This document shows positions 4,679 to 62,122 of a stretch of DNA of 64,000 nucleotides, in pieces. The notes under the pieces are model-generated. The model was not told the DNA's origin, did not search any database, and saw only the letters and a list, made by a program, of their open reading frames with translations. The DNA is taken from the IMG/VR virus record IMGVR_UViG_3300020172_001601, positions 62,001 to 126,000 of that record. One strand, 5' to 3'. The position numbers and the translations under genes were made by a program. Numbering within the stretch: the stretch's first letter is position 1; every line of letters starts with the position of its first letter.

Positions 4679-4767
4679 TTGAACCTGATCGTCTTGAACC
4701 TGATCGCCCTTTGGCTCTCTAGGTGTTTAGCAAAAACTCAATCTCCAATAACGAAGGGAATAGCCTC

Positions 4768-5538
4768 ATGGCAACAAAGAAGGCGGCGAAGGACGAATCA
4801 CCCGTCGCCAAGAAGCCGCTCAAGATTAAGGTGATTGGAACGGGCGGCATCGGCCTTTGCCTGCTTCCTTCGCTCTGTCGATACCTCAACTATAACGGCG
4901 AGAAATATCCCGCCGTGGAAGTGAGCCTGATCGACGGCGATACGTTCGAGGAACGCAATCGTGAGCGACAGGACTTTGTTGAGACGGGGCCGAAGGCGTC
5001 CATGACCGCTGCCGAATATCGGGGCAAATTCCCACGACTGATGTTTTGGGACCATCCGGTATACGTCGCCGATCACAACGTCATTCAGTTGATTCGGGAG
5101 AACGATATTGTTCTTCTCTGTGTGGATAATCACAAGACCCGCAAGCTGATTAGCGACCGGGCCGAAGAACTGAAGAATGTTACCGTCATCAGTGGCGGCA
5201 ACGATTGGACTGATGGAAACGTGTTGCTTCATATTCGACGGGATGAGAAGAACCTGACGCCACCTTTGGCGAGCAAGTTTCACCCGGAGATTTTGAATCC
5301 GACCGACGAGAACCCTGCCGACGTGGAACAGAAGGCAGAAGGTTGTGCAGAGTTGGCTGTTGCTGCACCGCAACTGCTGATTACGAACAACTACATTGCC
5401 GCCAACATGCTGGCGGGACTGTACAACGTGATTGACGAAGGGCGATACGAGAAGGTTCTCGCCGCTCCGCACAATTTCGCAGAGGTCTACTGTGATCTCT
5501 CCGTGATGAAGTCCATCCCACGAGAACGCAAGGTGTAA
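4768..5538 (+). CDS. ThiF/E1-like ubiquitin-activating enzyme
   Basis: VIGTGGIG, IDGDTFEERNRERQ, CVDN, GGND, putative catalytic GCAE, PQLLITN. Confidence 0.9.
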   Translation: MATKKAAKDESPVAKKPLKIKVIGTGGIGLCLLPSLCRYLNYNGEKYPAVEVSLIDGDTFEERNRERQDFVETGPKASMTAAEYRGKFPRLMFWDHPVYVADHNVIQLIRENDIVLLCVDNHKTRKLISDRAEELKNVTVISGGNDWTDGNVLLHIRRDEKNLTPPLASKFHPEILNPTDENPADVEQKAEGCAELAVAAPQLLITNNYIAANMLAGLYNVIDEGRYEKVLAAPHNFAEVYCDLSVMKSIPRERKV

Positions 5539-8324: not shown

Positions 8325-8415
8325 GGCGAGGTAGCTCAGTCTGTTAGAGCATTGTGAATAGGGGCCGAAAGGTCTACTAACGCAAGGGTCGGTGGTTAAA
8401 ATCCATCCCTCGCCA
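8325..8415 (+). ncRNA. tRNA-like RNA with extended GAAA-capped hairpin in place of anticodon loop
   Basis: Acceptor GGCGAGG/CCTCGCC, D arm, T arm (GGTTAAAATCC); no 7-nt anticodon loop. Confidence 0.7.
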
Positions 8416-8418
8416 CTT

Positions 8419-8487
8419 TGTAAGTCAAATGCCGTCAGGACTACATTTGCAAAACGTAACGTCTTGGCAACCATTTGTTGACTTACA
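8419..8487 (+). ncRNA. Y-RNA-like small RNA
   Basis: Terminal stem TGTAAGTC/GACTTACA, 5' GTCAAATGC, GGACTACATT, 3' ATTTGTTGAC. Confidence 0.6.
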
Positions 8488-8492
8488 TTTAT

Positions 8493-8617
8493 GGACTGTT
8501 AGCTCAGTGGCCTGTTTACAGGGAAGCCGGTTGTATTAGCCGAGAAATCGGATGATACAAACACTTCAGAGCGTCGTAGCAATACGAAGGTCGATGGTTC
8601 GATTCCATCACGGTCCA
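8493..8617 (+). ncRNA. tRNA-like RNA, GCAA tetraloop instead of anticodon, D-loop insertion
   Basis: GGACTGT/ACGGTCC acceptor; TCGTA-GCAA-TACGA; GATGG-TTCGATT-CCATC. Confidence 0.75.
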
Positions 8618-8621
8618 CTAT

Positions 8622-8799
8622 GGGGAAGTAGTAGAATCCAACTCAGAGCAGTTGGAGTGGAAAAGCAGTTTAGGCTCACGGAGCAATCCGCATGTTGATG
8701 GGGAAACCCATAAACATGAACCAAGAGGGGCGACCCTCGAACAACTGCCGAGAATACCGGGGTAACTCGGTGATGCTGGTTCGAGTCCAGCCTTCCCCA
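8622..8799 (+). ncRNA. tRNA-like RNA, GTAA tetraloop, ~110-nt multi-hairpin D-loop insertion
   Basis: GGGGAAG/CTTCCCC; CCGGG-GTAA-CTCGG; GCTGG-TTCGAGT-CCAGC. Confidence 0.75.
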
Positions 8800-8803
8800 C
8801 TAC

Positions 8804-8914
8804 GCAGCGGTAGCTCAAATAGAACCGTTTTACAGGTAGTGGCAACATTACTTGCATTTGGTAGAGCCTTCCGTAAGGAAGAGGTTGAAGGTGAGAGTCC
8901 TTCCCGCTGCACCA
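8804..8914 (+). ncRNA. tRNA-like RNA, GTAA tetraloop, D-loop insertion, encoded CCA
   Basis: GCAGCGG/CCGCTGC-ACCA; CTTCC-GTAA-GGAAG; T arm GAAGG-TGAGAGT-CCTTC. Confidence 0.75.
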
Positions 8915-8915
8915 T

Positions 8916-9047
8916 GCTGGGGTAGTAGAATTGGAATGTATGACTAGGAAGCGACATGAGGTTGTAATGACCTTTAATTCGCCCCCATGACCATACAGAG
9001 AACGCTACAGTAATGTGGAAATGCAGGTTCGAGTCCTGCCCCCGGCA
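8916..9047 (+). ncRNA. tRNA-like RNA, GTAA tetraloop, D-loop insertion
   Basis: GCTGGGG/CCCCGGC; CTACA-GTAA-TGTGG; GCAGG-TTCGAGT-CCTGC. Confidence 0.75.
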
Positions 9048-13280: not shown

Positions 13281-13352
13281 GTGATTGAAGCCAAACGGTG
13301 CGGCGTCTCTTTGTGAAAGAGATAATAGTGGGTTCGACTCCCATCAATCACC
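13281..13352 (+). tRNA. tRNA-His(GTG)
   Basis: TCTCT-TTGTGAA-AGAGA. Confidence 0.85.
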
Positions 13353-13364
13353 TGTTAGTTTTTT

Positions 13365-13437
13365 GGGCGTGGAGTTCGGTTGGTAGAACATCCCCCTGTC
13401 ACGGGGAAGGCTGCGGGTTCAACTCCCGTCACGCTCG
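13365..13437 (+). tRNA. tRNA-Asp(GTC)
   Basis: TCCCC-CTGTCAC-GGGGA. Confidence 0.85.
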
Positions 13438-13661: not shown

Positions 13662-13738
13662 GAGGTTGTGTTCGTCTAGTGGTCTAGGATGCCGTCGTTG
13701 AAGACGGCGACATGGGTTCAAATCCCATACACAATCTC
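13662..13738 (+). ncRNA. Glu-like tRNA body with 6-nt anticodon loop
   Basis: CCGTC-GTTGAA-GACGG; extended acceptor GAGGTTGTGT/ACACAATCTC. Confidence 0.65.
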
Positions 13739-13835: not shown

Positions 13836-13906
13836 GATTCGGGTTAGTGTAACGGTAGCACGGAGCCGTCAAAGGCTCCAGAGTGGTTCGACTCCACACC
13901 CTTATC
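13836..13906 (+). ncRNA. tRNA-like RNA, short anticodon loop (TAGTGTAACGGTAGCACG family)
   Basis: GGAGCC-GTCAAA-GGCTCC; T arm present. Confidence 0.6.
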
Positions 13907-13913
13907 ACAATAT

Positions 13914-17986: not shown

Positions 17987-17998
17987 CTGTTAATGATT

Positions 17999-18123
17999 GC
18001 CGGGTTAGCTCAATGGTAGAGCGCCAAAAACTACTCTCAGCAATATTTGGGCTTCGGCCATGCTCGTTGGGAATACATTCCACTCGGAGGAGGAGGTCGT
18101 TGGTCCGATTCCAACACCCGGCA
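17999..18123 (+). ncRNA. tRNA/Y-RNA chimera
   Basis: tRNA acceptor, D and T arms with anticodon arm replaced by GCAATATTTGGGC-TTCG-GCCATGC...GGGAATACATT. Confidence 0.7.
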
Positions 18124-18125
18124 CT

Positions 18126-19022
18126 ATGATTTGCGTTTACTTAGTAAATGAAGAACCGGCTTATATTGGGATGTTGTCCCTCAGCCTTAAAATGCTGCGA
18201 CAGCATAACCCTAATGTGCCAGTTATTGTTTACTATGTCCAAGATGGCAAAAGGGATTCACGAAAAATCCCGCTCACTGAAATAACGAGAGCCTTGAATA
18301 AGTTGCCAAACGACTATGCGTCGTTCAGTAATCTCTGCGAAGAACTCAATGTCGAGATTAGAGTTCGCAAGCCAAAACAAGAAGAAGCATATTACTCTCT
18401 GCATCGTTTGCTGTTGCAGGAGATCGAAGAAGAGACAGTGCTTCTGTTAGATGGCGACACCTTTATCTTCGGCAATATTGAGGAATTTCCCAAGATATAT
18501 GCTGGATACGATTTTGTCGCCACACCGAATTCTTGGGGCATGGTTCATCCGGTTCCTGGTTTAGACCCCAGCTTCAAGTCGTTCAACTCCGGCGTGGTGT
18601 TATGTCAGAACGGCATATTCAAGCGTTGGATGAATACAATAGGCGATTACTGTCAGAGATTATATGACGGTCGCCATCCACAGTCAGAATGGTTGTGGAG
18701 TGTAAGTTTAGAGTGTGCTGGCCGAGAAGAGTTGGCGGCGAGTTTGTTTGTTTTAGACAACGGTTTGAAGTACAGATACTTCGAGGATCAGCATGTGCAA
18801 ATGGGGAGTTACGATGGCAACACCCGCATATTGCACACGCTAAGTCCTAGTTGGCATTCGTTGTATAACGAATGCTTCAAACCACAACGGCGAATGCTTT
18901 TTAAGCCACGCTTAAAAAATGATGCAGATGCCAGTCGTGAAGCAGATGATGATCTTGATTATCCACCAGAGGCCGATGGCAATACCGCCAACGCCCAGGC
19001 CGAACAACCAAGTTTTGAATGA
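18126..19022 (+). CDS. GT-A fold glycosyltransferase (GT8-like)
   Basis: LLLDGDT DxD motif, FNSGVV, ILH. Confidence 0.75.
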   Translation: MICVYLVNEEPAYIGMLSLSLKMLRQHNPNVPVIVYYVQDGKRDSRKIPLTEITRALNKLPNDYASFSNLCEELNVEIRVRKPKQEEAYYSLHRLLLQEIEEETVLLLDGDTFIFGNIEEFPKIYAGYDFVATPNSWGMVHPVPGLDPSFKSFNSGVVLCQNGIFKRWMNTIGDYCQRLYDGRHPQSEWLWSVSLECAGREELAASLFVLDNGLKYRYFEDQHVQMGSYDGNTRILHTLSPSWHSLYNECFKPQRRMLFKPRLKNDADASREADDDLDYPPEADGNTANAQAEQPSFE

Positions 19023-19182: not shown

Positions 19183-19184
19183 CT

Positions 19185-19290
19185 TGTAGAGACAAATGCT
19201 AGTTGGGTTTACATTGGATGCTAAGGCTCGGACCTAAAAGCTACCGCAAGGTGGCTGCAAAACAACTCAGCGCAATTTGTTGTCTCTATA
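19185..19290 (+). ncRNA. Y-RNA-like small RNA
   Basis: TGTAGAGACAAATGC...GGGTTTACATT...GCAATTTGTTGTCTCTATA. Confidence 0.65.
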
Positions 19291-19291
19291 T

Positions 19292-19366
19292 CAGGGTGTA
19301 GCTCAGTTTGGCTAGAGCGCCCGGTCTGGAACCGGGAGGCCGTAGGTTCAAGTCCTACTACCCTGA
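19292..19366 (+). tRNA. tRNA-Pro(TGG), C at position 33
   Basis: CCCGG-TCTGGAA-CCGGG. Confidence 0.8.
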
Positions 19367-19369
19367 CTT

Positions 19370-19500
19370 TTGTGACAAATGCTCGTTTGGGATTACATTT
19401 GGTTCGACTCCAAGGGGCGGCTCTTTCAAAAACATGCCGCCCAACCAGCACAGGGCAACCTGGGGCTGGGGTCCGATCTCAGCACAATTTGTTGTCACAA
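19370..19500 (+). ncRNA. Y-RNA-like RNA with T-loop
   Basis: TTGTGACAAATGC...GGGATTACATT-TGGTTCGACTCCA...GCACAATTTGTTGTCACAA. Confidence 0.65.
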
Positions 19501-19524
19501 AATACACTTAAAAGAAAGATTGCT

Positions 19525-20313: not shown

Positions 20314-20316
20314 CTT

Positions 20317-20415
20317 GGTTCAAATGCAGGCAGGATTACATTTATCGGGCGATGAGCCGAAAGGGTCGCTGGTTCGATTCCAGCCCCAGCAGCTTAGATA
20401 GATTATGTTGAAACC
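20317..20415 (+). ncRNA. Y-RNA-like RNA with T arm
   Basis: GGTTCAAATGC..GGATTACATT...GCTGG-TTCGATT-CCAGC...TGTTGAAACC. Confidence 0.55.
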
Positions 20416-26696: not shown

Positions 26697-26765
26697 GCCC
26701 CTGGTGATGGACACAGCAGATCGTTCTAAGGTCAGCGTTGAGGGTTCGATTCCTTCCGGGGGCGC
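26697..26765 (+). tRNA. tRNA-Arg(TCT), reduced D arm
   Basis: GATC-GTTCTAA-GGTC; T arm intact. Confidence 0.55.
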
Positions 26766-26766
26766 T

Positions 26767-26836
26767 TGGGTCAAATGCCATGATGGGAGTACATTCTGTT
26801 AAAATGACCCCTCTCATCGAATAATTTGTTGACCCA
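26767..26836 (+). ncRNA. Y-RNA-like small RNA
   Basis: TGGGTCAAATGC...GGGAGTACATT...AATTTGTTGACCCA. Confidence 0.65.
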
Positions 26837-26894
26837 TTTTTTAGAAATTGTGCCTACCATTGGCACTTACTCAAGCTAAGGGTACGGGCGTGTA

Positions 26895-39018: not shown

Positions 39019-39121
39019 GGTCGGGTAACTCAGCGGCAGAGTCATCAGTGAATCCGGGTGGTTTTATAGTTGCCATTGCGGAAAGCTGATGAGGTCGCAG
39101 GTTCGAGTCCTGCCCCGGCCA
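39019..39121 (+). ncRNA. tRNA-like RNA with extended hairpin in anticodon arm
   Basis: GGTCGGG/CCCGGCC; CATCAGT..GCTGATG enclosing ~33-nt insert. Confidence 0.7.
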
Positions 39122-39528: not shown

Positions 39529-40437
39529 ATGAACATCACACGCATTGCTCCGTCGCCGACCGGCGATATGCACATTGGCACTGCCAGAACCGCATATTTC
39601 AACTGGCTCGCAGCACGGGCCAGCGGTGGTAAGTTCATTCTTCGGGTGGACGACACCGATCAGAAGCGAAACGATCCAGCCTATACAGAAGTCATTCTGT
39701 CCACAATGAAGTGGCTAGGTTTGGACTACGATGAGATCGTCTTCCAGAGTTCCAGATTCGACGTATACAAGGCCGCAGCGGGCTTGTTGATCCATGAAGG
39801 CTGGGCCGTTCCAAAAGATGGAGCCACGGTTTTTAACTTGAAGAAGGACCATGTTTTTCCTTCTCATTGGAAGGACGAAATCAAGGGCGACATCAAGATC
39901 AGCGATGATGACATATCCCATATGGATGGGATGGTTCTCATTAAGTCTGATGGGAGTCCATCTTATAACTTTTGTTCGATTGTTGATGATTTGCACATGG
40001 GGGTCAACCTAATCATCCGTGGAGTGGATCATATAACAAACACAGCAAAGCAGGTGATGCTTTGGGATGTCCTCAATAGCGGACAGACGATACCAAGGTT
40101 TGCCCACCTGGGTCTTATTTGCATTGATGGAAAGCCTATGTCCAAAAGAGACGGGGCATCGAGCATGTTGAATTACATGAACGCCGGATATGATTCCGAC
40201 GCCATGTTGAATTTTCTTGCACGCCTTGGTTGGGGGCCAACAAAGGACGACAAGTCCACAACCCTATTGCCGAGAGACAAGATGCTTGAAATGTTTCTAA
40301 CTTCGGGTAAGATGAGGAGTCAGCCAGCTAGTTTCGATTCTGGCAAATTGGAGTCGTTCGACCGCAAGTACAAGGCCCGTAAGGGGACTTGGCGAACGGG
40401 CGACAAGTTGATTTCTGACACTAACAAAGAGGCATAG
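39529..40437 (+). CDS. glutamyl-tRNA synthetase family protein lacking anticodon-binding domain
   Basis: RIAPSPTGDMHIG, LRVDDTD, IIRGVDH, KPMSKRDG; only 302 aa. Confidence 0.85.
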   Translation: MNITRIAPSPTGDMHIGTARTAYFNWLAARASGGKFILRVDDTDQKRNDPAYTEVILSTMKWLGLDYDEIVFQSSRFDVYKAAAGLLIHEGWAVPKDGATVFNLKKDHVFPSHWKDEIKGDIKISDDDISHMDGMVLIKSDGSPSYNFCSIVDDLHMGVNLIIRGVDHITNTAKQVMLWDVLNSGQTIPRFAHLGLICIDGKPMSKRDGASSMLNYMNAGYDSDAMLNFLARLGWGPTKDDKSTTLLPRDKMLEMFLTSGKMRSQPASFDSGKLESFDRKYKARKGTWRTGDKLISDTNKEA

Positions 40438-41086
40438 GCATGAACGAGGGAACTAAACCTGACATTGAACTGGCAAAGGATAAGGCGTGCGAGCAATTCG
40501 TTCGTCGTTGTCGGTATGCCATTTGTATCGAGAAGATCGACAACGCCGGTCTACATGCTGGTGCGCCGATGTACTTCTACTGCAAGGACTGTGGCATTCC
40601 TACAGAAGTTTTGCCCGAAGACTATCTGTTTACGCCATTGCGTCAGTGTAGCCAATGCCAAGGTCTTCACCAACAAGGCTGGCTGGACCATGCCAAGTCT
40701 ATGGCGAAGGATGACGACCTGTAGTATCGAATGAATATCTCAGGGATATGTTATACCCCGGACATACTTTCGGTGCTTGACCGATAGTTAGTCCGGGGTA
40801 TAATTATTTACTATGGATAATGAACAAGTCGTAGAGACAGAAAAGAAACCTCTGACACTCAGAGATGTATGCTTGGGAGTGTTGGGCGTATTCGTGATTC
40901 TGGCGATATTTGCCTTGCCTATTATGTTTCTGATGAATTTCCTGTTACCAGTTTTCGGTGTAGAGCGGCAGATTGACTACCAGCACTCGTTGGCGTTTGC
41001 GGTTCTTCTGTTTTGCATGGGGCGTTGCTTCAGCCCAGCCAAGTGATTTTACAACTGAAGCAAATCAGGGTATAATCCGGGCTGTC

Positions 41087-41455
41087 ATGAAAAAAACCGA
41101 TGCCTACAAATTCTTGAATTCGTTGGTGGAAAAGTATCCGAGCGATGCGGCTCCGATGCTGATTGACATCATTGTGGACTATTTGCTGTTCCCAAAAGGT
41201 GACGGCACCAGTCCCCAACTTACTGGCATTGACCAAAAAGTTGCTGAAATGATGGTTGATTCGAGTCGCAAGATTGAGGCTGTGAAATACGTTCGGGAGC
41301 AACTGCAATGTGGTCTTAAAGAAGCCAAGGACTATGTTGAGCAACGAGTGTGGCCTGCTGGCGTCGGTCCTCAAAGTGAAAAGGCTTTAGAACTACAATC
41401 CCGATATGTACAATCGGTTTTGGACAAAATTCGTGTTGATTATAACGTAGGGTGA
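41087..41455 (+). CDS. ribosomal protein L7/L12 C-terminal-like domain protein
   Basis: KIEAVKYVRE..CGLKEAKDYVE. Confidence 0.7.
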   Translation: MKKTDAYKFLNSLVEKYPSDAAPMLIDIIVDYLLFPKGDGTSPQLTGIDQKVAEMMVDSSRKIEAVKYVREQLQCGLKEAKDYVEQRVWPAGVGPQSEKALELQSRYVQSVLDKIRVDYNVG

Positions 41456-42034: not shown

Positions 42035-42370
42035 CATGCCAAGGGCGTCTTGGATTCATCGTGTTGATGCCCGCCGATTTCATTCGGCGGCAAGAATGAT
42101 GGAAGACGATTTGGAAGGTGCCTACTTGACCTGTAGGGAAAAGTACGGTGCAGAAGTGGCTGGAGTAGTGTTGGTCACAATACTCCGACAAAAATTGAAC
42201 AACAATCAAGACCAATGGCCTCCACCGGAAGACCTTATTCGCAAGGTGAACAACTTTCTCGTGGAACACGGCTTAATGATTGATTGAATTTGTTGACTGG
42301 ATGTGGGGTGCGAACCTCACCATGACATAGTGTGTCTGGTCAAATAACTCGAAAGGCAATGGTGATTACG

Positions 42371-44077
42371 ATGGCTAACAAGAATCTATTCAAGTCTGAG
42401 CGTGGCTCAATTGTTCCAGCAACGGACGTTCTCAACGAAGCTGGTGGTGTTGCATACAAGATGAGTGCAAAGCAGGCCCTTGCGCAGTACGTCTGCACTG
42501 GCTGCTTGAACGGCACCTACTACACGTCTGCCAAGACGCAACTGGACACTGTTCGTCAGTTGCTTACTGAAGTCGAGCCTGAGTTCCTTGGTCAGTTGGC
42601 TGTGTACTCGCACGAAAAGTCCTTCATGAAGGACTTGCCTGCTCTGTTGGTCGCATTCCTCGCATCCGACAAGGGTGCTGGTGGTGGTCCAACTACGGCT
42701 ACGCAGGAGCGAAAGCTGAAGACGCTCCGTAAGGTTTTCCATCGTGTCATCGACAGCGGCAACATGCTGCGCAACTTTGTGCAGATGATCCGTTCGGCAG
42801 CATTCGGTCGCAAGTCATTCGGTGAAGTGCCTCGCAAGCTGATTCGTGACTGGTTCGAGAATAAGTCTCCGGCTGGTATTTTCTTCCAGAGCATTGGCAA
42901 TAGCCCATCCCTGGCAGATATTATCAAGCTGACCAAGCCGAAGCCGAACACGCCTGAAAAGGCGGCTGTATTGGCGTATCTGCTTGGTGCAGAAACCGTT
43001 GACGGCGAAGATGGCAAGTTGCTTGTTCGCAAGTATCTTGACCGTGCCGACAAGCAGGTGAAGGTTGCGTACTCGCAGCCTTACGACAACCTGCCGGAAA
43101 TCATTCGTGAATACGAAGCGTGGAAGAAGGACAAGAGCCTCCCGGTTCCTGCCATCAACTTCCGCTTCCTGGACAACGAGAAGCTGTCAACTGCTCAGTG
43201 GGCAGATATTGCTTCCAAGGCAAACTGGCTTACGACCCTGAAGAACCTCAACGCATATGCCGACCACGGCGTATTCGGCGTTGAAGGCATGACTGACATG
43301 ATCGCCGCACGTCTCAGCAATGCTGATGAAGTGCGTAAGGTTCGGGTATTCCCATACCAGATCATGATGGCCTACCTCGCAACCGATACGGAAGCGAAAG
43401 TACCGCCCAAGGTCCGTAACGCCATTCAGGATGCTATGGAAGTGGCATGTGAAAACGTACCAGCGTTGGGAAAGGTTAAGTTCTTCCCGGACGTGTCTGG
43501 TTCGATGAGGAGCGCTGCTATTACGGGCGACCGTGGTTCGGCGACTTCTAAGGTTCGGTGTGTTGACGTGGCTGCTCTGTTCGCAGTGGCAATGCTTCGT
43601 CGCAACCCGGAAGCGGAAGTAATTCCGTTCGAGCAGACGGTTCGTGAACTTACACTGAACCCTCGTGACAGCATCATGACCAACGCTACTCGCCTCGCAG
43701 CGATTGGCGGTGGTGGAACCAACTGTTCGGCCCCACTTGCTTTGCTCAACGCAAAGAAGGATTGGTCGGCAGACGTGTTGGTGTATATTTCGGACTATGA
43801 GTCCTGGGTGGATAGCACTGGCTACCACGCTGGTAATGGCAACGGTACAGCACTGCTCAATGAGTGGGTGAAGTACAAGAGCCATAACAAGAATGCCAAG
43901 CTGATTTGCATCGACTTGACCCCTCGTGCAAACCATCAGGTCAAGGAACGTGATGATATTCTCCAGGTCGGTGGATTCTCGGACAACGTATTCAACGTGA
44001 TCGCAAGGTTCGTTGAAGGCGGCTGGTCGAAGGATTTTTGGGTCAAGGAGATTGAAAGCGTTCAACTGGATACTTAA
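42371..44077 (+). CDS. rsr: Ro60/TROVE domain RNA-binding protein with vWA domain
   Basis: NEAGGVAY, TGCLNGTYY, LKNL, VFPYQ, MIDAS DVSGSM, GGGTNCSAPL, ISDYESW. Confidence 0.9.
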   Translation: MANKNLFKSERGSIVPATDVLNEAGGVAYKMSAKQALAQYVCTGCLNGTYYTSAKTQLDTVRQLLTEVEPEFLGQLAVYSHEKSFMKDLPALLVAFLASDKGAGGGPTTATQERKLKTLRKVFHRVIDSGNMLRNFVQMIRSAAFGRKSFGEVPRKLIRDWFENKSPAGIFFQSIGNSPSLADIIKLTKPKPNTPEKAAVLAYLLGAETVDGEDGKLLVRKYLDRADKQVKVAYSQPYDNLPEIIREYEAWKKDKSLPVPAINFRFLDNEKLSTAQWADIASKANWLTTLKNLNAYADHGVFGVEGMTDMIAARLSNADEVRKVRVFPYQIMMAYLATDTEAKVPPKVRNAIQDAMEVACENVPALGKVKFFPDVSGSMRSAAITGDRGSATSKVRCVDVAALFAVAMLRRNPEAEVIPFEQTVRELTLNPRDSIMTNATRLAAIGGGGTNCSAPLALLNAKKDWSADVLVYISDYESWVDSTGYHAGNGNGTALLNEWVKYKSHNKNAKLICIDLTPRANHQVKERDDILQVGGFSDNVFNVIARFVEGGWSKDFWVKEIESVQLDT

Positions 44078-44132
44078 AATATATCCAGCTAGGTTTGGCT
44101 GGGGACCGGGTTGCCGGTCCTCGGCCTGCTTT

Positions 44133-44255
44133 TTGGCGGTAGCTCAATGGTAGAGCAAAAGTAAAAACAAATCTAAGCGATATTTGGGCTTCGGCCATGC
44201 AGTTTGGATTACATTATCCAACTTTAGGTTGTGTGTTCGATTCACACCCCGCCAG
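44133..44255 (+). ncRNA. tRNA/Y-RNA chimera directly downstream of Ro60
   Basis: D arm TAGCTCAATGGTAGAGC, T arm GTGTG-TTCGATT-CACAC, insert GCGATATTTGGGC-TTCG-GCCATGC..GGATTACATT as in 17999. Confidence 0.75.
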
Positions 44256-46671: not shown

Positions 46672-49233
46672 ATGGGTTCGTTCAAAGATACGCTGCAACT
46701 CCCGAAAACCGATATGCCCATCGCTGCCAACTTACCGGCCAGCGAACCCGCCGTTTACGCATCCTGGGGCAACGTCTATTCCCGCTTGAAGCGAGACGGG
46801 AAGAACCCTTTCATTCTTCATGATGGCCCGCCGTATGCTAACGGCGATATTCATATCGGCCATGCTCTCAATAAAATCCTCAAAGACTTCGTTGTGAAGT
46901 TCCAATACTTCAACGGGCGAGCCGTCGAGTTTGTCCCCGGCTGGGACTGTCACGGACTTCCGATTGAATCGAAGGTTTATTCCATCATCCGAGTTGGCGG
47001 CGGCAATCCCAGCAAAGAGCCGTTGGAATTAGTCCAACGCATGTGTCGGAAATATGCCGGTGAGCAAATTGCTAAACAAAAAGAGCAATTTCAAACCCTG
47101 GGCGTAATCGCCGATTGGGAAAACCACTACGAGACGATGAGTCCGTGGTTTGAAAACATGATCTCTCAGCGACTTGCTGAATTGCGGGATCATGGATATT
47201 TGGTTCGCCGCAAGAAGCCTGTCTATTGGTCTTGGTCTTATGGCACTGCACTGGCTGAGGCAGAAGTCGAATATCGTGACCGAGTAGATAATTCGGTGTA
47301 TGTCGTATTCAAAACTGATAAGTTCCCTTGGGGGCTTTTGGTTTGGACCACAACGCCGTGGACACTTCCGGCCAACGTCGCCGTGGCATTGAACCCCAAG
47401 ATGAAATATCTTGCTGTTCGTGTGCGAGATTACAATCTCCCCGTGCTAGTAGCTGCCGATCTTGTCAAGACCTTGACAGATAAAGGAATCATTGAGCATG
47501 TCTTTGACCTTTATAGTGCGCAAGGCGACGAGTTCAATGGTTGGCAATTTCAACATCCTGTTTATCCCGACCAAACCGTGCCGTGCGTAATGGCCGACTT
47601 TGTGTCCGCTGATAGCGGCACTGGTTGTGTACATATCGCCCCTGGTCATGGAGAAGAAGACTATCGAGTAGGGTTGGCGAATAATCTTCCGGTCGTCATG
47701 CCTGTTGACGGAACGGGCAGATACACCGAGGGCAAATACGAAGGTCAATGGATTTTTGATGAAACTGACGGTTCGTATAAAGAATACAACTCGAATCCCA
47801 ATATCCTTGCTGATTTAAGGGAGCGTGGTCTATTGGTTCATACTGAGAAGATCACTCACAGCTATCCCTATTGCAGCCGATCTGGAACGCCGGTCATCTT
47901 CCGTGCTACTGAACAGTGGTTCTTGGACTTGGACAAGATTCGCAATCTGATCTTGGGGCCGATGACTGCTATTGAGAATGTGCAGTTCTATCCAGAGCAT
48001 TCCAAGAACCGTATGGTTCCGATGCTGGAGAACCGCCCTGACTGGTGCATCAGTCGCCAGCGAGTATGGGGCGTGCCGATCTTTGAAGGACCGGACATTC
48101 TTGACGTATGGTTTGATTCAGGATTGACGTGGAACATCCTGGGAGATCGTCAGGCTGACGTTTATCTGGAAGGCAACGATCAGCACCGTGGATGGTTCCA
48201 GAGCAGCCTATGGCTGTCTGTGGCCCTTCAGGGCGTTGCGCCATACAAGAAGGTCATCACGCATGGCTTTGTTGTCGATCAAGACGGCAAAAAGATGGCT
48301 AAGTCCAAGGGCAATGTCGTGTCGCCATTGGAAGTGACTCAAAAGCAGGGAGCAGAAGTGCTTCGCTATTGGGTTGCGAGCATTGACTATACGAAGGATG
48401 CGCAGTGCAGCCCGGAGATCATGAAGCGTGCTGCCGAGGGCCACAAGAAACTTCGTAATACTTTCAGATTCCTAGTGGCAAATATGCCCAAGGAATCTCC
48501 GTATAAGAACGACCAGAATATGGTTTTCCTGCCGGTCAATCGTTGGATTTACGAAAAGACTCAGAAGGTCTTTTCTGAAGTCCATCAGTTGTTTGCCGAC
48601 AACCTGTTCCATGCTGGTCTGCAAAAGTTGACGGAGTATATCAATACTGATTTGAGCGGTATTTACATGAACGCCGTCAAAGACTGCTTGTATTGTGATG
48701 CTGTCGATAGTGTGTCCCGAAAGAATGTTGTTCACGTCATGAGTAAAATCCTCAAGGCGATGATGACGCTTGTGGCTCCGTTGTTTACCTACACGGCGCA
48801 GGAAGTGTTCAATTATTGTCCTGAATGGGTGAAGGGTGACGCCAAGGATATTTTCGATCTTCAATACGAAGCATTGCCAGACTTGCCGCCACACTTGGCT
48901 CGGATGGACGAAGCGTATTGGAAAGAGGCGTTGTCCGCATTCCATACTGAGTTCGACAAGATCAAGACCGCAGGCAAGGCTCGTGATACTTTGGAAGTCG
49001 TTATTGAATCGACTTCTGGTGATACGTTCTTTGTCGGGGCTGAAGATTGGTTTGTCGTAAGTCATTGGGCATCACATCCTTCAACCTGTGAGGCCCTGGG
49101 GGAATTCTCGGTGGGCGACAAGGTTTATCGGATTGTCAAGAGTCAGAAGAATAAGTGCGAACGATGCTGGAAACGCAATGCAGAACAGGAGTTATGTCCT
49201 CGCTGTCTCGGTGTGGTGAATCCGCAGGTTTGA
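46672..49233 (+). CDS. ileS: isoleucyl-tRNA synthetase
   Basis: HDGPPYANGDIHIGH, WTTTPWTLP, DWCISRQR, KMAKS, C-terminal CERC Zn finger. Confidence 0.97.
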   Translation: MGSFKDTLQLPKTDMPIAANLPASEPAVYASWGNVYSRLKRDGKNPFILHDGPPYANGDIHIGHALNKILKDFVVKFQYFNGRAVEFVPGWDCHGLPIESKVYSIIRVGGGNPSKEPLELVQRMCRKYAGEQIAKQKEQFQTLGVIADWENHYETMSPWFENMISQRLAELRDHGYLVRRKKPVYWSWSYGTALAEAEVEYRDRVDNSVYVVFKTDKFPWGLLVWTTTPWTLPANVAVALNPKMKYLAVRVRDYNLPVLVAADLVKTLTDKGIIEHVFDLYSAQGDEFNGWQFQHPVYPDQTVPCVMADFVSADSGTGCVHIAPGHGEEDYRVGLANNLPVVMPVDGTGRYTEGKYEGQWIFDETDGSYKEYNSNPNILADLRERGLLVHTEKITHSYPYCSRSGTPVIFRATEQWFLDLDKIRNLILGPMTAIENVQFYPEHSKNRMVPMLENRPDWCISRQRVWGVPIFEGPDILDVWFDSGLTWNILGDRQADVYLEGNDQHRGWFQSSLWLSVALQGVAPYKKVITHGFVVDQDGKKMAKSKGNVVSPLEVTQKQGAEVLRYWVASIDYTKDAQCSPEIMKRAAEGHKKLRNTFRFLVANMPKESPYKNDQNMVFLPVNRWIYEKTQKVFSEVHQLFADNLFHAGLQKLTEYINTDLSGIYMNAVKDCLYCDAVDSVSRKNVVHVMSKILKAMMTLVAPLFTYTAQEVFNYCPEWVKGDAKDIFDLQYEALPDLPPHLARMDEAYWKEALSAFHTEFDKIKTAGKARDTLEVVIESTSGDTFFVGAEDWFVVSHWASHPSTCEALGEFSVGDKVYRIVKSQKNKCERCWKRNAEQELCPRCLGVVNPQV

Positions 49234-59146: not shown

Positions 59147-60796
59147 ATGAACGAATTCCATATTTCGGAAAAAGACAACAACACCACGTTCGTCACAACG
59201 GCGATTGATTATCCGAACGCTCTGCCACATATCGGCACAGCATTCGAGAAGATCGGCGCTGACGTATACGCCCGGTTCCGTCGTTTCCAGGGTCGTGATG
59301 TATATTTCACGATGGGCAACGACGAGAACACTGTGAAGGTTCTCAAAGCAGCAAAAGCCGTAGACAAGCATCCTCAGCCATATGTCGATGAAATGGCCGA
59401 TGCGTTTAAGGCTGTGTGGAAAGAACTCAACATTTCCTTTGACGACTTCATTCAGACCAGTGAAGATCGACACCTGTTGGGTGTTCAGAGATTCCTGCGT
59501 GCTGTGAATTCCGCTGGTTATATTGAGAAGCGACCATACAAGGCTTTGTATTGTGAGGGCTGTGAAGAGTTCAAGAGTCCAAATAGCTTGGACTATGCAA
59601 AGCGATGCCCGAACCATACTGGCACACCTTTGGTGGAACGGGAGGAAGAGAATTACTTCTTTCTTCTGTCTGCATTCAAGCAGCGTGTGGCTGATTTGAT
59701 TTATCCCACTCCATTCCTCACTGCCTTCCTGAGTATTGAGCCTGAGTCTCGCTACAACGAAGTCACTAAGTTCATCGACACGGAACTGACGGATATTTCC
59801 ATCAGTCGCCGTAATGAAGGCTGGGGCATTCCAATTCCGTGGGACGACACCCAAGCCACCTATGTCTGGTTCGACGCTTTGTTGAACTATTTGACTGTGA
59901 TTGGTTTTGGGAACGATTGGGAGAAATTCCAAAAGTATTGGCCTGCTGAAGTTCACTTCATTGGCAAGGACATTACTCGGTTCCACTGTGCATTGTTCCC
60001 GGCAATGTGCATGGCCTATAACGAAGGATGTGATAAGCTGGGTGAGCCTCAATACAAGTTGAAGGCTTTTCCTCAGCGTGTATTTGCACACGGCTTCGTC
60101 AATCAAAAGAAGGGAAGTCAGGTTGTCAAGATTTCCAAGAGCGGAGATTCAATCCGACCTGGAGAACTGATTGAGCAGTTCGGGTCGGATGCGTACAGAT
60201 ACTATTTCTTGTCGAAGTTCAACTACGATACGGACGGTGAATATAGCCTGGACCACTTTAGAGAAGTGTATAACGCCGACCTCGCCAACTCCTTGGGCAA
60301 CCTTGTGAGTCGCACCGTAGGAATGTCGTTGCAGTATTTCGACGGGAAGATTCCACCGATGGTCGCAGAAGGCCAGCCTTGGCTTGATGAGAAGACGGCG
60401 TTGGAATACGAGCAATTTATTGTTGATTGTTGTTCGTATCGGCACGCTATTGAATGGACGTGGAAGATCATCTTCAACGCCAACAAGTTGATCGAGAATT
60501 CAAAGCCGTGGGAATTGGTTAAGTTGCCCGGCAACACCTGTGGTCAGGTGTTGGGCCAACTTGTGGGCAGTCTGAGAATCATCAGTCTGTTGATCCGACC
60601 GTTCACGCCAGCGGTGGCCGAGAAGATTTACACGACGTTTCAGTGGGCTGAAGGATGGAATGAAGTTGATTGGGAGTTCGTTAAGAAGTTGGCGACGAAC
60701 AACTTCCTGGGACTCGAAAACGGTATTGCCATCAACAGGAATGTTTTAGATAATGCTGGAAAGTTTCCGGTGCTTTTTCCGAGAGTCAAATCATGA
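59147..60796 (+). CDS. metG: methionyl-tRNA synthetase
   Basis: TTAIDYPNALPHIG, ISISR..WGIP, YVWFDAL, IGKDI, KISKS, LANSLGNL. Confidence 0.96.
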   Translation: MNEFHISEKDNNTTFVTTAIDYPNALPHIGTAFEKIGADVYARFRRFQGRDVYFTMGNDENTVKVLKAAKAVDKHPQPYVDEMADAFKAVWKELNISFDDFIQTSEDRHLLGVQRFLRAVNSAGYIEKRPYKALYCEGCEEFKSPNSLDYAKRCPNHTGTPLVEREEENYFFLLSAFKQRVADLIYPTPFLTAFLSIEPESRYNEVTKFIDTELTDISISRRNEGWGIPIPWDDTQATYVWFDALLNYLTVIGFGNDWEKFQKYWPAEVHFIGKDITRFHCALFPAMCMAYNEGCDKLGEPQYKLKAFPQRVFAHGFVNQKKGSQVVKISKSGDSIRPGELIEQFGSDAYRYYFLSKFNYDTDGEYSLDHFREVYNADLANSLGNLVSRTVGMSLQYFDGKIPPMVAEGQPWLDEKTALEYEQFIVDCCSYRHAIEWTWKIIFNANKLIENSKPWELVKLPGNTCGQVLGQLVGSLRIISLLIRPFTPAVAEKIYTTFQWAEGWNEVDWEFVKKLATNNFLGLENGIAINRNVLDNAGKFPVLFPRVKS

Positions 60797-60995: not shown

Positions 60996-61760
60996 ATGAG
61001 AATCGCATCCGAATTCCACGACTACTACGATGTAGGCATGGCTGAGGGCCAGGATCAATCCTTGGTCTATCAGCGATACCCTATCGTAGAGGAACGGGAG
61101 CATTACCCGTTCGGTTCAATGTATTCAGGCTACAGCCTGAATGCTCGATCTCTTTACGTCCGCTCATATACCATTGGGTTCTGTGGCAAAATGTACAAGG
61201 TATTGGAACTCAATACCTTGGAGAACGGTTCACGCAACGACAAGGAAGGTCGATCTACTCGTAAGTGGGCATACAACCTGCGGGATGTTGACACTTACAT
61301 CCGTCACCATTATCCTAAGCAATACGCTGACTATTTAGAAAAGAATTGGCGGCGTGGCAATGGCTGGTCTGGCGAACAGCGTCAGCACGCCTTTGATTCA
61401 TTCTTCAATGGTCGTAATCAGTGGGATCGCAAGCCTACCGAAGAGGAATTGAACAAGAATGAAGAGTGGCGTCGAAGCTGGTTCGAGAAGCATCGCAGTC
61501 CTATATTCGTAGCTGAGTATTCTACTGTCGCCAACAAATACGGCGGTAGGATCACATATAACGCCCAACTGAAGCCATTTGAGTTTTATCGGGTGTTCGA
61601 TCCTTATCAGGCTTATCAGGAAGTCGCCATGTGGCTTTCTAATCAAGCTGTTCCGATCAAGCCGATTCCAGAGCTTGATGATGTGACAATGGCTGAGAGC
61701 AAAGGTTTCAATAAGTTTAGTTTTAGAAAAGACCCCAGCAGCAAAAAGCGAAAGCACTAG
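60996..61760 (+). CDS. phage hypothetical protein
   Basis: FHDYYD..IGFCGK..DPYQAYQEV. Confidence 0.65.
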   Translation: MRIASEFHDYYDVGMAEGQDQSLVYQRYPIVEEREHYPFGSMYSGYSLNARSLYVRSYTIGFCGKMYKVLELNTLENGSRNDKEGRSTRKWAYNLRDVDTYIRHHYPKQYADYLEKNWRRGNGWSGEQRQHAFDSFFNGRNQWDRKPTEEELNKNEEWRRSWFEKHRSPIFVAEYSTVANKYGGRITYNAQLKPFEFYRVFDPYQAYQEVAMWLSNQAVPIKPIPELDDVTMAESKGFNKFSFRKDPSSKKRKH

Positions 61761-61836
61761 GGGTTGAACGGTGAGTCCAATCGGTAAGGCGCAAGTCGCT
61801 CCGATGTAACTGAGGGTTCGATTCCCTCCAACTCCA
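61760..61836 (+). ncRNA. Ala-type tRNA-like domain without D stem or anticodon (mini tmRNA-like)
   Basis: GGGGTTG/CAACTCC-A (G3:U70), GAGGG-TTCGATT-CCCTC, ATCGG/CCGAT stem capped by GCAA hairpin. Confidence 0.65.
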
Positions 61837-62122
61837 CTATGAATGAAAAACCAGCAGATGGCGTCCGAGGCTTTTTTCTTTACAGTCCGTTTTCGCATCG
61901 GCACTTCTTCCGTGTTTACGGAGAAGTCGATCCGACGACGGGCCATAAGACGTTCACTGATTACAAGGTGTGCGCCGAAGATATAGAAGTCACTATTGAA
62001 GCAAATGGGTTGTCCCTGTATGAAGGGGATGAAGATAAAAACCGTCTCGATTGGTCCAGTCGTGTCTTAGGAAGAGATGGCAAAGACCACCTGGATGTGC
62101 GAACACCAAAAAAGGAACAGTA

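What the first reader, a model, noticed from the sequence alone, without database searches (positions are those of the whole stretch)
42371..44255. Ro60 gene plus tRNA/Y-RNA chimeras: the putative Ro-binding module is grafted into the anticodon arm of tRNA scaffolds
Seen: directly after Ro60 (44133-44255), and again at 17999-18123, a tRNA body (acceptor ends, D arm TAGCTCAATGGTAGAGC, T arm) carries GC(A/G)ATATTTGGGC-TTCG-GCCATGC...GGA(T/A)TACATT in place of the anticodon arm. These are the same motifs as in the free Y-like RNAs (CAAATGC, GGATTACATT, GCAATTTGTTG) but in circularly permuted order and closed by a UUCG loop. Known: bacterial YrlA RNAs have a tRNA-like domain whose 5' and 3' ends form the Ro-binding stem and whose acceptor stem is closed by a loop. 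Inference: this is the opposite permutation, with free acceptor ends, so it could be processed by RNase P, given CCA or charged. It might tether Ro60 to translation or RNA-repair machinery.
Basis: partly seen in the sequence, partly recalled or inferred. Interest (0 to 1): 0.88.

Follow-up and report, generated by a model that had tools for sequence, protein, structure and literature searches.

The report
Y RNA built in tRNA order
A 340-kb uncultured phage encodes, right after its Ro60 gene, a tRNA-shaped RNA whose anticodon loop is replaced by the conserved Ro60-partner (YrlA-type Y RNA) module. It is therefore a Y RNA in normal tRNA gene order with free acceptor ends, a new arrangement of a known RNA class.

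Summary
The Ro60 ORF (42371-44077) matches D. radiodurans Rsr over its full length.

Two tRNA-shaped genes, A (44134-44255) and B (17999-18123), have acceptor, D and T arms but no anticodon loop. In its place is a 58-62-nt structured insert.

The insert has the same architecture as the Ro60-side module of YrlA-type Y RNAs: P1, an asymmetric loop (5' AUGCN, 3' N5UUUG), a 7-bp helix P2 (GUNNGGA/UCUNNNC, middle pairs covary), then (N)UACAUU. Here P1 is only 3 bp and is capped by UUCG.

The module recurs in free Y-like RNAs of the window and in circularly permuted YrlA-like RNAs of related Ro60 phages. The latter match Rfam YrlA at E about 1e-4 to 1e-11, below the gathering score.

After in-silico permutation the chimeras align colinearly with those YrlA-likes. 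Copy A lies 3' of Ro60 in five contigs, with compensatory changes.

Copy B looks degenerate and is half-deleted in a close relative.

Best reading: a single-chain YrlA-class Y RNA in unpermuted tRNA order, processed like the phage's tRNAs. Ro60 binding, CCA addition and charging are untested.

This is a new variant of a known kind. M. smegmatis YrlA, cut by RNase P and given CCA, is the nearest precedent.

The parts
42371..44077 (+). Ro60 (Rsr/TROVE + vWA) gene, 568 aa
   Evidence: Pfam vWA_Ro60 7e-16 and weak TROVE. Full-length phmmer match to D. radiodurans Rsr 2NVO at 7e-18, plus Xenopus, human and Thermus-phage Ro60. NCBIfam Rsr 1.5e-27, below the equivalog cutoff. 41% identical to the Myxococcus phage Mx1 TROVE protein.
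44097..44133 (+). Terminator-like hairpin (13 bp, 10 G-C) and T-run between the Ro60 stop codon and chimera A
   Evidence: Also present in the related contig L006, with a G-C to G.U change. Whether it terminates transcription, leaks or serves as a 5' leader is unknown.
44134..44255 (+). Chimera A, a tRNA-shaped Y RNA. Acceptor 5' 44134-44139 (one G missing); D arm 44142-44156; anticodon-stem 5' strand 44158-44162; junction AAAAACAAA 44163-44171.
   Evidence: Coordinates. Rfam tRNA 37.9 bits with a 58-nt insertion. CM R1 146 bits. Orthologs 3' of Ro60 in L006/L257, L256, L246 and L258. Pair statistics.
44172..44220 (+). Y module inside A. P2 3' strand UCUAAGC 44172-44178; loop GAUAUUUG 44179-44186; P1 GGC-UUCG-GCC 44187-44196; loop AUGCA 44197-44201; P2 5' strand GUUUGGA 44202-44208; UUACAUUAUCCA 44209-44220.
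   Evidence: Same architecture in 15 RNAs of three topologies, with a shuffle control. Matches the Rfam YrlA consensus features CgaAUGC / gaaCUAc / AaAaAcUuGucG.
44221..44255 (+). A, 3' part. Anticodon-stem 3' strand ACUUU 44221-44225; variable loop AGGUU 44226-44230; T arm 44231-44247; acceptor 3' strand CCCGCCA 44248-44254; discriminator G 44255, followed by CU.
   Evidence: The compensatory change AAAGU/ACUUU to AAAGA/UCUUU is seen in L258. The CU trailer is shared with 45 of 49 tRNAs.
17999..18123 (+). Chimera B, a paralog in the tRNA array 11 nt after tRNA-Glu(CUC). Same module (P2 UCUCAGC/GUUGGGA, P1 GGC-UUCG-GCC at 18050-18059). Anticodon stem only 2 bp; T loop UCCGAUU.
   Evidence: (124 bits). 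Relative to A: 5 of 7 acceptor pairs and 2 of 5 T-stem pairs changed on both sides, and P2 has A-U to C-G. The ortholog in L260 lacks the 5' 74 nt. The listed ORF start at 18060 lies inside it; the real start is probably ATG 18126.
8416..8492 (+). Free Y-like RNA 1. Terminal stem GUAAGUCAA/UUGACUUAC, loop AUGCC / AACCAUUUG, P2 GUCAGGA/UCUUGGC, then CUACAUU. Lies directly 3' of a tRNA-like gene.
19184..19292 (+). Free Y-like RNA 2, between two tRNA-Pro genes
19366..19505 (+). Free Y-like RNA 3. Contains a T-arm-like hairpin UUGG-UUCGACU-CCAA.
20314..20415 (+). Free Y-like RNA 4. Has the 5' module and a T arm GCUGG-UUCGAUU-CCAGC. The 3' partner of P2 is unclear.
26764..26842 (+). Free Y-like RNA 5. 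P2 GAUGGGA/UCUCAUC. Terminal stem followed by a U-run.
42285..42350 (+). Ro60 5' leader. AAUUUG-UUGAC...GUCAA-AUAAC, that is P1 and both loop flanks of the module in the same capped order as the chimeras. No clear P2.
   Evidence: Conserved in L246 (Ro60 95% identical) but not in L247 (83%).

Best explanation
**What it is.** Chimera A, and less certainly B, is a Y RNA of the YrlA class written in normal tRNA gene order. The body is a tRNA: a 7-bp acceptor stem plus discriminator, a D arm, a variable loop and a T arm.

The anticodon stem does not end in an anticodon loop. It runs on through a conserved junction (AAAAAC... / ...UACAUU) into the YrlA-type module. That module is a 7-bp P2 helix, an asymmetric internal loop (AUGCN / N5UUUG) and a P1 helix. 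In ordinary YrlA the RNA's own 5' and 3' ends form P1. Here P1 is 3 bp and closed by a UUCG tetraloop.

**Inferred mechanism.**
- The RNA is transcribed with, or next to, the tRNA and Ro60 genes.
- RNase P cuts its 5' end. The pathway that trims this phage's CCA-less tRNAs cuts its 3' end, and CCA is probably added.
- The phage Ro60 ring binds the module. The tRNA-shaped part is then presented as the effector or recognition domain, as proposed for YrlA.
- The difference from YrlA is a genuine open acceptor end in a single chain.

**Shown here:** the anatomy, the covariation, the homology of the module, and the synteny with Ro60.

**Inferred:** Ro60 binding, processing, CCA addition and any downstream partner.
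For: **The gene next door is a Ro60.**

**The body is a tRNA.**
- The Rfam tRNA model scores A above its gathering score despite a 58-nt insertion.
- Structure counts on 5 distinct sequences give 99.3% paired cells. Ten pairs changed on both sides, against 2.2 in shuffles (0 of 500 reach it). Slid controls reach at most 48%.
- RNAalifold independently recovers the acceptor, D, T, P1 and P2 helices.
- The Levitt pair covaries: A15:U48 in A, G15:C48 in L258 (sequences).

**The insert is a YrlA-type module.**
- The same P1 / AURCN / P2 (GNNNGGA/UCUNNNC) / NUACAUY / N4-6YUUG layout occurs in 4 chimeras, 7 free Y-like RNAs and 4 YrlA-likes. P2 pairs 6-7 of 7 and covaries in the middle. Per-RNA shuffle controls are mostly 5 or fewer of 2000.
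- The YrlA-likes of related Ro60 phages match Rfam RF02553 at 38-53 bits, E 1e-4 to 4.5e-11. The model consensus shows the same motifs.

**The topology is a circular permutation.** Cutting at the UUCG loop and joining the acceptor ends gives a colinear alignment with those YrlA-likes.

**The module is linked to Ro60 phages.** The 5' module motif occurs 28 times, all on the Ro60 strand, in 621 kb (both strands counted) of Ro60-related loci. It occurs twice in 1.9 Mb (both strands counted) of unrelated viral loci.

**Copy A is conserved next to Ro60.** It lies 3' of Ro60 in five contigs (Ro60 90-100% identical), with a compensatory anticodon-stem change and a G.U to A-U change in P2.

**Its flank looks like a tRNA's.** Both chimeras carry the phage's tRNA 3' trailer: CU follows the discriminator in 45 of 49 tRNAs, against a 5% background.

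**There is experimental precedent.** M. smegmatis YrlA is cut by RNase P and receives CCA while bound to Rsr (PMC4201824).
Against: - No binding or expression data exist; the phage is uncultured.
- P1 is only 3 bp, and the literal YrlA motif GNCGAAN0-1G is absent (GCC|AUGC instead of CGA|AUGC).
- Neither chimera matches Rfam YrlA beyond a 16-bit partial hit.
- A terminator-like hairpin and T-run sit directly upstream of A, so co-transcription with Ro60 is uncertain.
- The window's own copy A has a 1-nt deletion in the acceptor stem. This may be an assembly error or a real defect.
- Copy B has a 2-bp anticodon stem and C55 in the T loop. It is also half-deleted in a 96%-related genome.
- MFE folding alone does not recover the module, and z-scores are modest.
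- The unpermuted form was found in one narrow clade only.
Confidence: 0.7

Rival explanations
1. The tRNA body is only a vehicle. It supplies RNase P and 3'-trimming processing sites and nuclease resistance, so that a short Ro60-binding hairpin is released and stabilised. This is what engineered 'tRNA scaffold' RNAs do. The tRNA part has no effector role of its own.
For: - The window holds at least six other tRNA-shaped genes whose anticodon or D loop is replaced by unrelated structured inserts: 8325-8415, 8493-8617, 8804-8911, 8916-9047, 39019-39121.
- That suggests the phage uses tRNA frames generically.
- The free Y-like RNAs of the same window work without a full tRNA domain.
Against: - In relatives the same module is joined to a complete, conserved tRNA-like domain, as in YrlA.
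- D-stem and T-stem sequences and the Levitt pair are conserved or covary in the chimeras beyond what processing alone needs.
- This rival still makes the RNA a Y RNA. It differs only in what the tRNA part does.
Confidence: 0.15
2. The conserved module binds some other factor, not Ro60. Candidates are another phage or host protein, or an RNA target. Its proximity to Ro60 would then only reflect the shared tRNA-array neighbourhood.
For: - Most module copies lie kilobases from Ro60 inside tRNA arrays.
- The canonical CGAA motif is altered in this clade (CAAA in the free RNAs, absent in the chimeras).
- Several Ro60 loci at 40-47% identity show no module within 10 kb.
Against: - The module is homologous to the part of YrlA assigned as the Rsr-binding site. 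YrlA RNAs co-precipitate with Rsr in two species (PMC4201824).
- Every locus holding the module was retrieved through its Ro60 gene, and the motif is about 40-fold rarer in unrelated viral loci.
- Copy A is fixed immediately 3' of Ro60 in five contigs.
Confidence: 0.08
3. These are pre-tRNAs with an intron. The 51-58-nt insert is removed, leaving a decoding tRNA. ARAGORN proposes Asp, anticodon AUC.
For: - ARAGORN -i models A as tRNA-Asp(AUC) with a 51-nt intron.
- A 5-bp anticodon stem exists in A.
Against: - The proposed splice site (31/32) is not a known intron position.
- The insert is far too short for a group I intron, and no Rfam intron family matches.
- The would-be anticodon changes from AUC to AAC between phages whose Ro60 is 95% identical (L246).
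- Position 37 would be C.
- Copy B has no anticodon stem or loop to regenerate.
- The insert is the most conserved part, with a 21-nt core identical between the paralogs. That is the opposite of what is expected of an intron.
- The phage already has three tRNA-Asp(GUC) genes.
Confidence: 0.03
4. They are decaying relics: tRNA genes disrupted by recombination with a Y RNA gene, no longer functional.
For: - Copy B has a degenerate anticodon stem and C55, and its ortholog in L260 has lost the 5' 74 nt.
- The window's copy A has a 1-nt deletion in the acceptor stem.
Against: - Between the paralogs, 5 of 7 acceptor pairs and 2 of 5 T-stem pairs changed on both sides with pairing kept.
- The L258 ortholog of A has a compensatory anticodon-stem change and a covarying Levitt pair.
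- A is retained at the same site in five contigs from different samples.
Confidence: 0.04

Closest known systems
YrlA (Y RNA-like A; Rfam RF02553; Chen et al. 2014, PMC4201824; Wang et al. 2018, bioRxiv 10.1101/312249)
   Same: - Encoded with Ro60 on the same strand.
- The Ro60-side module has a P1 helix, an AUGC-type 5' loop, an N5UUG-type 3' loop, a 7-bp P2 and then CUAC/UACAU.
- It continues into an anticodon-like stem and a tRNA-like D arm (GCUC...GAGC), variable loop, T arm and acceptor-like stem with tRNA tertiary pairs.
   Different: - The topology is the reverse. In YrlA the ends are at P1 and the acceptor stem is a closed hairpin ('circularly permuted tRNA'). Here the ends are at a 7-bp acceptor stem with a discriminator, and P1 is a 3-bp UUCG-capped hairpin.
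- The literal GNCGAAN0-1G motif is absent.
- The Rfam model does not detect the chimeras.
[quoted passage not shown]
   Same: The Rsr-bound species has an open 7-bp acceptor stem with a CCA end, and the Ro60 module at the anticodon side. The end product has the same shape as predicted here.
   Different: It is made by cutting a permuted precursor into two base-paired pieces of 82 and 65 nt. The phage RNA would be a single chain encoded directly in tRNA order.
Deinococcus radiodurans Yrn1
   Same: A Ro60-bound Y RNA with T-arm and partial D-arm features in unpermuted order.
   Different: In Yrn1 the Ro60-binding stem occupies the acceptor position, and an anticodon-like arm is retained. Here it is the other way round.
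Thermus phage phiLo Ro60 with Yrl1/Yrl2 (PMC12135203); YrlA RNAs of mycobacteriophages, CcrColossus and Bacillus phage G
   Same: Phage-encoded Ro60 with phage-encoded Y-like RNAs near the gene. Binding has been shown for phiLo.
   Different: Those RNAs have terminal-stem (ordinary Y or YrlA) topology. No tRNA-order form is described.
Engineered 'tRNA scaffold' RNAs (Ponchon and Dardel; from my own knowledge, not checked here), and naturally permuted tRNA and two-piece tmRNA genes
   Same: - A structured RNA replaces the anticodon loop of a tRNA frame, so that cellular tRNA enzymes process and stabilise it.
- Circular permutation is a known evolutionary move in tRNA-related genes.
   Different: The scaffolds are artificial. 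Permuted tRNAs and tmRNAs are restored to, or function as, translation RNAs rather than Ro60 partners.

Membership tests
YrlA (RF02553) | Encoded close to, and on the same strand as, a Ro60/Rsr gene | tested here: met
   A starts 56 nt after the Ro60 stop codon, on the same strand, in five contigs. B lies 24 kb upstream on the same strand.
YrlA (RF02553) | Ro60-side module: P1 helix carrying GNCGAAN0-1G, an asymmetric internal loop, and a second helix | tested here: inconclusive
   Loop AUGCN / N5UUUG, the 7-bp P2 and the UACAUU junction match the model consensus and the relatives. However, P1 is 3 bp and the literal GNCGAA is absent (GCC|AUGC).
YrlA (RF02553) | tRNA-like domain: D arm, T arm, acceptor-like stem, tRNA tertiary pairs with a covarying Levitt pair | tested here: met
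   Rfam tRNA 37.9 bits. Helices covary. A15:U48 versus G15:C48. B deviates, with C55 and A15/C48.
YrlA (RF02553) | Topology: 5' and 3' ends form the Ro60-binding stem, and the acceptor stem is closed by a loop | tested here: not met
   The order is acceptor-D-[module]-T-acceptor, with P1 closed by UUCG.
YrlA (RF02553) | Score at or above the Rfam gathering threshold (69 bits) | tested here: not met
   No hit at E<=5 in the window scan. Only a 16-bit partial hit over the D arm in a short-stretch scan.
YrlA (RF02553) | Physical association with Ro60 | not testable with these tools
   Needs EMSA or RIP.
tRNA (RF00005) | Cloverleaf body scoring above the gathering threshold | tested here: met
   A scores 37.9 bits against a threshold of 29, in a short-stretch search only. 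Whole-window scans and default ARAGORN miss both copies.
tRNA (RF00005) | 7-nt anticodon loop with U33 and a stable anticodon | tested here: not met
   A 58-62-nt structured insert takes its place. The only candidate anticodon differs between near-identical phages (AUC versus AAC). There is none in B.
tRNA (RF00005) | CCA end and aminoacylation | not testable with these tools
   CCA is not encoded. The same CU trailer follows the discriminator as in 45 of 49 tRNAs. No G3:U70, long variable arm or G-1 is visible in the sequence.
Intron-containing tRNA (group I or bulge-helix-bulge) | A recognisable intron (group I core, or BHB at 37/38) whose removal leaves a normal anticodon arm | tested here: not met
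   No intron family hit. The insert is 58 nt, and the ARAGORN boundary is at 31/32. B cannot regenerate an anticodon arm. A formal BHB search was not run.
Metazoan Y RNA (RF00019) / D. radiodurans Yrn1 | Terminal stem with a bulged conserved helix, detected by the model | tested here: not met
   No hit at E<=5.

The most novel reading that the evidence does not exclude
The open acceptor end is functional. [quoted passage not shown] Candidates are one of the phage's own aminoacyl-tRNA synthetases, EF-Tu, the CCA enzyme or an RNA ligase; alternatively a host anticodon nuclease takes it as a decoy. Ro60 would thus be physically delivered to translation or tRNA-repair machinery during infection. 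That would be a Ro60-tethered 'tRNA' with a job in phage-host conflict over tRNAs.
Probability: 0.1. Interest if true: 0.85.

Novelty: new variant of a known kind. Interest (0 to 1): 0.6.

Why it matters
**An open question becomes testable.** What the tRNA-like domain of bacterial Y RNAs does is still unknown (PMC4201824; bioRxiv 10.1101/312249). Here nature supplies the same Ro60 module in three wirings within one group of phages:
- free stem-loop RNAs;
- permuted YrlA-type RNAs with a closed acceptor stem;
- a single-chain form with a real, open acceptor stem.

Comparing their Ro60 binding, processing and partners would show whether the acceptor end matters. It would also show which nucleotides Ro60 reads, because P1 is reduced to 3 bp here.

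**It bears on how Y RNAs and tRNAs interconvert.** A concrete intermediate is now available for that evolutionary discussion.

**It shows how much annotation misses.** Huge phages carry many Y-type RNAs inside tRNA arrays, up to 8 within 20 kb in a relative. Standard annotation (Rfam gathering scores, default ARAGORN) finds none of them.

Tried and rejected
- **blastn against cultured phages:** no match for the Ro60 region.
- **Whole-window Rfam scans:** only tRNAs at the gathering score. At E<=5 there was nothing for either chimera, and the single 'YrlA' hit (13298-13419, 22.6 bits) spans two adjacent tRNAs. That is the dimeric-tRNA artefact the YrlA authors warn about.
- **Single-sequence MFE folding:** inconsistent between A and B, with weak z-scores, even when the tRNA helices were constrained. 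The module became clear only by comparison.
- **Two degenerate pattern scans of viral contigs:** A stricter pattern found only the two window copies and one relative.
- **My first pairing scheme for the insert:** I had the GC of 'AGC' pairing with the GC of 'AUGC'. I dropped it once the covarying P2 helix UCUNAGC/GUUNGGA emerged.
- **CM R1 on Ro60 loci at 40-47% identity and on Mx1:** it found ordinary tRNAs only. A topology-aware regex also found no capped-P1 form there.
- **The search for a B ortholog:** it found a half-deleted copy instead. The missing 5' half was not found in any held locus.
- **Literature searches:** no description of a tRNA-order Y RNA turned up. The 2026 tRNA-mimic preprint concerns other families.
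Full report
**Source and context.** The window is part of IMGVR_UViG_3300020172_001601, a 340-kb uncultured phage contig. All large ORFs and all RNA genes lie on the + strand.
- ARAGORN finds 49 tRNAs between 10.8 and 39.2 kb.
- The window also encodes three class I aminoacyl-tRNA synthetase-like proteins.
- The closest cultured relative of the Ro60 protein is Myxococcus phage Mx1, at 41% identity. Its gene also sits among tRNAs.

**The Ro60 gene.** The ORF at 42371-44077 is a Ro60.
- Pfam vWA_Ro60 scores 7e-16, with a weak TROVE hit.
- It aligns end to end with D. radiodurans Rsr (2NVO, 7e-18), and also with Xenopus, human and Thermus-phage Ro60 structures.

**The observation.**
- They align at 81% column identity. 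They share an identical D arm and an identical 21-nt core, AUAUUUGGGCUUCGGCCAUGC.
- The 18-nt core occurs twice in the window, against 0.03 expected.
- Default ARAGORN and whole-window Rfam scans miss both.
- With introns allowed, ARAGORN calls A a tRNA with a 51-nt 'intron'.
- In a short-stretch search the Rfam tRNA model scores A at 37.9 bits (gathering score 29). A 58-nt insertion sits exactly where the 7-nt anticodon loop belongs.

**More copies, and covariation.** A covariance model built from the copies finds A-type orthologs immediately 3' of Ro60 in four further contigs.
- These are L006/L257, L256, L246 (Ro60 95% identical) and L258 (90% identical).
- All four have a perfect 7-bp acceptor stem, UGGCGGG/CCCGCCA. 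The window's copy lacks one G.
- L258 carries a compensatory change in the anticodon stem (AAAGU/ACUUU to AAAGA/UCUUU). It also has G.U to A-U in the insert helix and a covarying Levitt pair (A15:U48 to G15:C48).
- Between paralogs A and B, 5 of 7 acceptor pairs and 2 of 5 T-stem pairs changed on both sides. One pair of the insert helix changed from A-U to C-G.
- Over five distinct sequences, 99.3% of cells pair. Ten pairs have double changes, against 2.2 in shuffles (0 of 500 reach it). Slid controls reach at most 48%.
- One caveat applies: the structure came from these sequences.
- RNAalifold independently predicts the acceptor, D, T, P1 and P2 helices. It does not predict the anticodon stem, because B has only two pairs there.

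**What the insert is.** Related Ro60 phages (Ro60 43-46% identical) carry RNAs in their tRNA arrays that match Rfam YrlA. The scores are below the gathering threshold, but the E-values are significant:

| Locus | Bits | E-value |
|---|---|---|
| L003:4328-4460 | 53.4 | 4.5e-11 |
| L250:4160-4296 | 52.1 | 8e-9 |
| L250:4495-4630 | 46.3 | 3.7e-7 |
| L253:4002-4133 | 37.9 | 1e-4 |

- These RNAs have the permuted order T arm, acceptor hairpin, D arm.
- The YrlA consensus printed reads cggCgaAUGCuuggGgaaCUAc ... guAuGuucCccaaAaAcUuGucGccg.
- That corresponds to P1, a 5-nt loop AUGCu, a 7-bp P2 and then CUA on the 5' side. On the 3' side it is the P2 partner, an 8-nt loop ending in UuG, and then P1.
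- The chimeras carry exactly this, read in the other order: UCUAAGC (P2 3' strand), GAUAUUUG, GGC-UUCG-GCC (P1, capped), AUGCA, GUUUGGA (P2 5' strand), UUACAUU.

**The module across three topologies.** A script extracted these elements from 15 RNAs: chimeras, free Y-like RNAs of the window and of L003, and YrlA-likes.
- All 15 show the same layout. P1 pairs 3 of 3 at the loop. P2 pairs 6-7 of 7.
- The outer P2 pairs are nearly constant (G-C ... G.U, G-C, A-U). The three middle pairs covary freely.
- Shuffling the partner region reaches the observed score in 0-5 of 2000 trials for most RNAs.
- Cutting each chimera in the UUCG loop and joining its acceptor ends gives sequences that MAFFT aligns colinearly with the YrlA-likes over their whole length.

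**Link to Ro60.** I searched for the 5' module motif, AURC-N4-10-GG(A/U)-N-UACA(A/U)(C/U).
- It occurs 28 times, always on the Ro60 strand, in 621 kb (both strands counted) of loci retrieved through Ro60. It occurs twice in 1.9 Mb (both strands counted) of unrelated viral loci.
- Most free copies start about 10-15 nt after a tRNA.
- The capped-P1 (tRNA-order) form occurs only in the window's clade.
- That the module is the Ro60-binding part is inferred from the literature. YrlA and YrlB co-precipitate with Rsr in Salmonella and M. smegmatis, and this region is the assigned Rsr site (PMC4201824). A phage Ro60 binds phage Y-like RNAs (PMC12135203).

**Processing.**
- In 45 of 49 tRNAs of the window the discriminator is followed by CU, against a 5% background. 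CCA is never encoded.
- Both chimeras have the same CU trailer.
- B lies 11 nt after tRNA-Glu, inside the array.
- A is preceded by a 13-bp terminator-like hairpin and a T-run, so its transcription is unresolved.
- M. smegmatis YrlA has a 7-bp acceptor stem. It is cut by RNase P and receives CCA while bound to Rsr.
- The authors of the YrlA structure call most YrlAs 'circularly permuted tRNAs with closed acceptor stems'.
- The phage RNA would reach the M. smegmatis end state as a single chain.
- Aminoacylation is not supported by anything seen. There is no anticodon and no G3:U70, and neither a long variable arm nor a G-1.

**Weak points.**
- P1 is only 3 bp, and the literal GNCGAA motif is missing.
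- B has a 2-bp anticodon stem, C55 in the T loop and a mismatched 15/48 pair.
- In a genome whose neighbouring gene is 96% identical (L260), only the 3' half of B remains. No 5' half is present in any held locus. B may therefore be decaying.
- The window's copy A has a 1-nt acceptor deletion that four relatives lack.
- Nothing is known about expression.

**Rivals.**
- *Intron-containing pre-tRNA:* unlikely. The insert is the most conserved part, and no intron family matches. The would-be anticodon differs between near-identical phages (AUC versus AAC), and B cannot regenerate an anticodon arm.
- *tRNA frame as a processing scaffold only:* compatible with the data. It is encouraged by at least six other tRNA-shaped genes in the window that carry unrelated inserts.
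- *Module binds something other than Ro60:* cannot be excluded without experiments.

**Novelty.** Four full-text searches found no description of a Y RNA in tRNA order.
- Known relatives are YrlA (permuted), M. smegmatis YrlA (a two-piece open form made by cleavage) and Yrn1 (Ro60 stem at the acceptor position).
- I rate this a new variant of a known kind. It is of moderate to high interest to RNA biologists, because it turns the unknown role of the YrlA tRNA domain into a testable comparison.

Noticed in passing
window 8325-9047 and 39019-39121: A run of tRNA-shaped genes without a normal anticodon loop:
- 8325-8415 has a 24-nt loop with a GGCC-GAAA-GGUC hairpin.
- 8493-8617 and 8804-8911 have large D-loop insertions and GNRA-capped anticodon stems (UCGUA-GCAA-UACGA; UUCC-GUAA-GGAA). 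The latter has an encoded CCA.
- About 8624-8800 and 8916-9047 have ~60-130-nt inserts.
- 39019-39121 has a 37-nt loop and is conserved in L006 and L256.

The phage seems to use tRNA frames for several unrelated small RNAs.
   Followed up: partly
window 42285-42350 (Ro60 5' leader): AAUUUG-UUGAC[hairpin]GUCAA-AUAAC reproduces P1 and both loop flanks of the Y module in capped order, just upstream of the Ro60 start codon. It is conserved in L246 (Ro60 95% identical) but not in L247 (83%). This could be an autoregulatory Ro60 site in its own mRNA.
   Followed up: partly
window 8416-8492, 19184-19292, 19366-19505, 20314-20415, 26764-26842: Five free Y-like RNAs, each starting just after a tRNA 3' end. 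None is detected by Rfam. Their 5' strand reads CAAAUGC where YrlA has CGAAUGC, and the 3' strand changes to match (UUGUUGA versus UUGUCGC). Relatives hold up to 8 such modules within 20 kb (L250).
   Followed up: yes
L260:3936-4000 versus window 17988-18123: In a closely related genome, chimera B has lost its 5' 74 nt. The remaining 3' half still shows a compensatory T-stem change (GUUGG/CCAAC versus GCUGG/CCAGC).
   Followed up: partly
window, all tRNA genes: 45 of 49 tRNAs have CU directly after the discriminator, and none encodes CCA. This uniform 3' trailer suggests one dedicated 3' processing route.
   Followed up: partly
window 18060-19022: The listed ORF start (ATG 18060) is the AUG of the conserved CCAUGC inside chimera B. 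The glycosyltransferase-8-like gene more likely starts at the in-frame ATG 18126, right after the RNA.
   Followed up: partly
window 39529-40437, 46672-49233, 59147-60796, 40973-41455: Translation-related genes near Ro60:
- A 302-aa GluRS/GlnRS catalytic domain with no anticodon-binding domain (GluQ-RS-like length).
- A class I Ile/Leu/Val-type synthetase.
- A MetRS-like protein.
- A protein with an L7/L12 C-terminal-like domain.
   Followed up: no
window 13664-13738, 13836-13908: ARAGORN reports two tRNAs with abnormal anticodon loops ('tRNA-???', two-base anticodons) inside the array.
   Followed up: no
window 61760-62033: Sub-threshold Rfam hits to tmRNA (33 bits) and permuted tmRNA (23 bits). 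The relatives L003 and L253 carry clear tmRNA genes (133-136 bits) in their tRNA arrays.
   Followed up: no
window 3755-5538: Adjacent JAB-domain and ThiF/E1-like ORFs, a possible ubiquitin-like conjugation pair.
   Followed up: no
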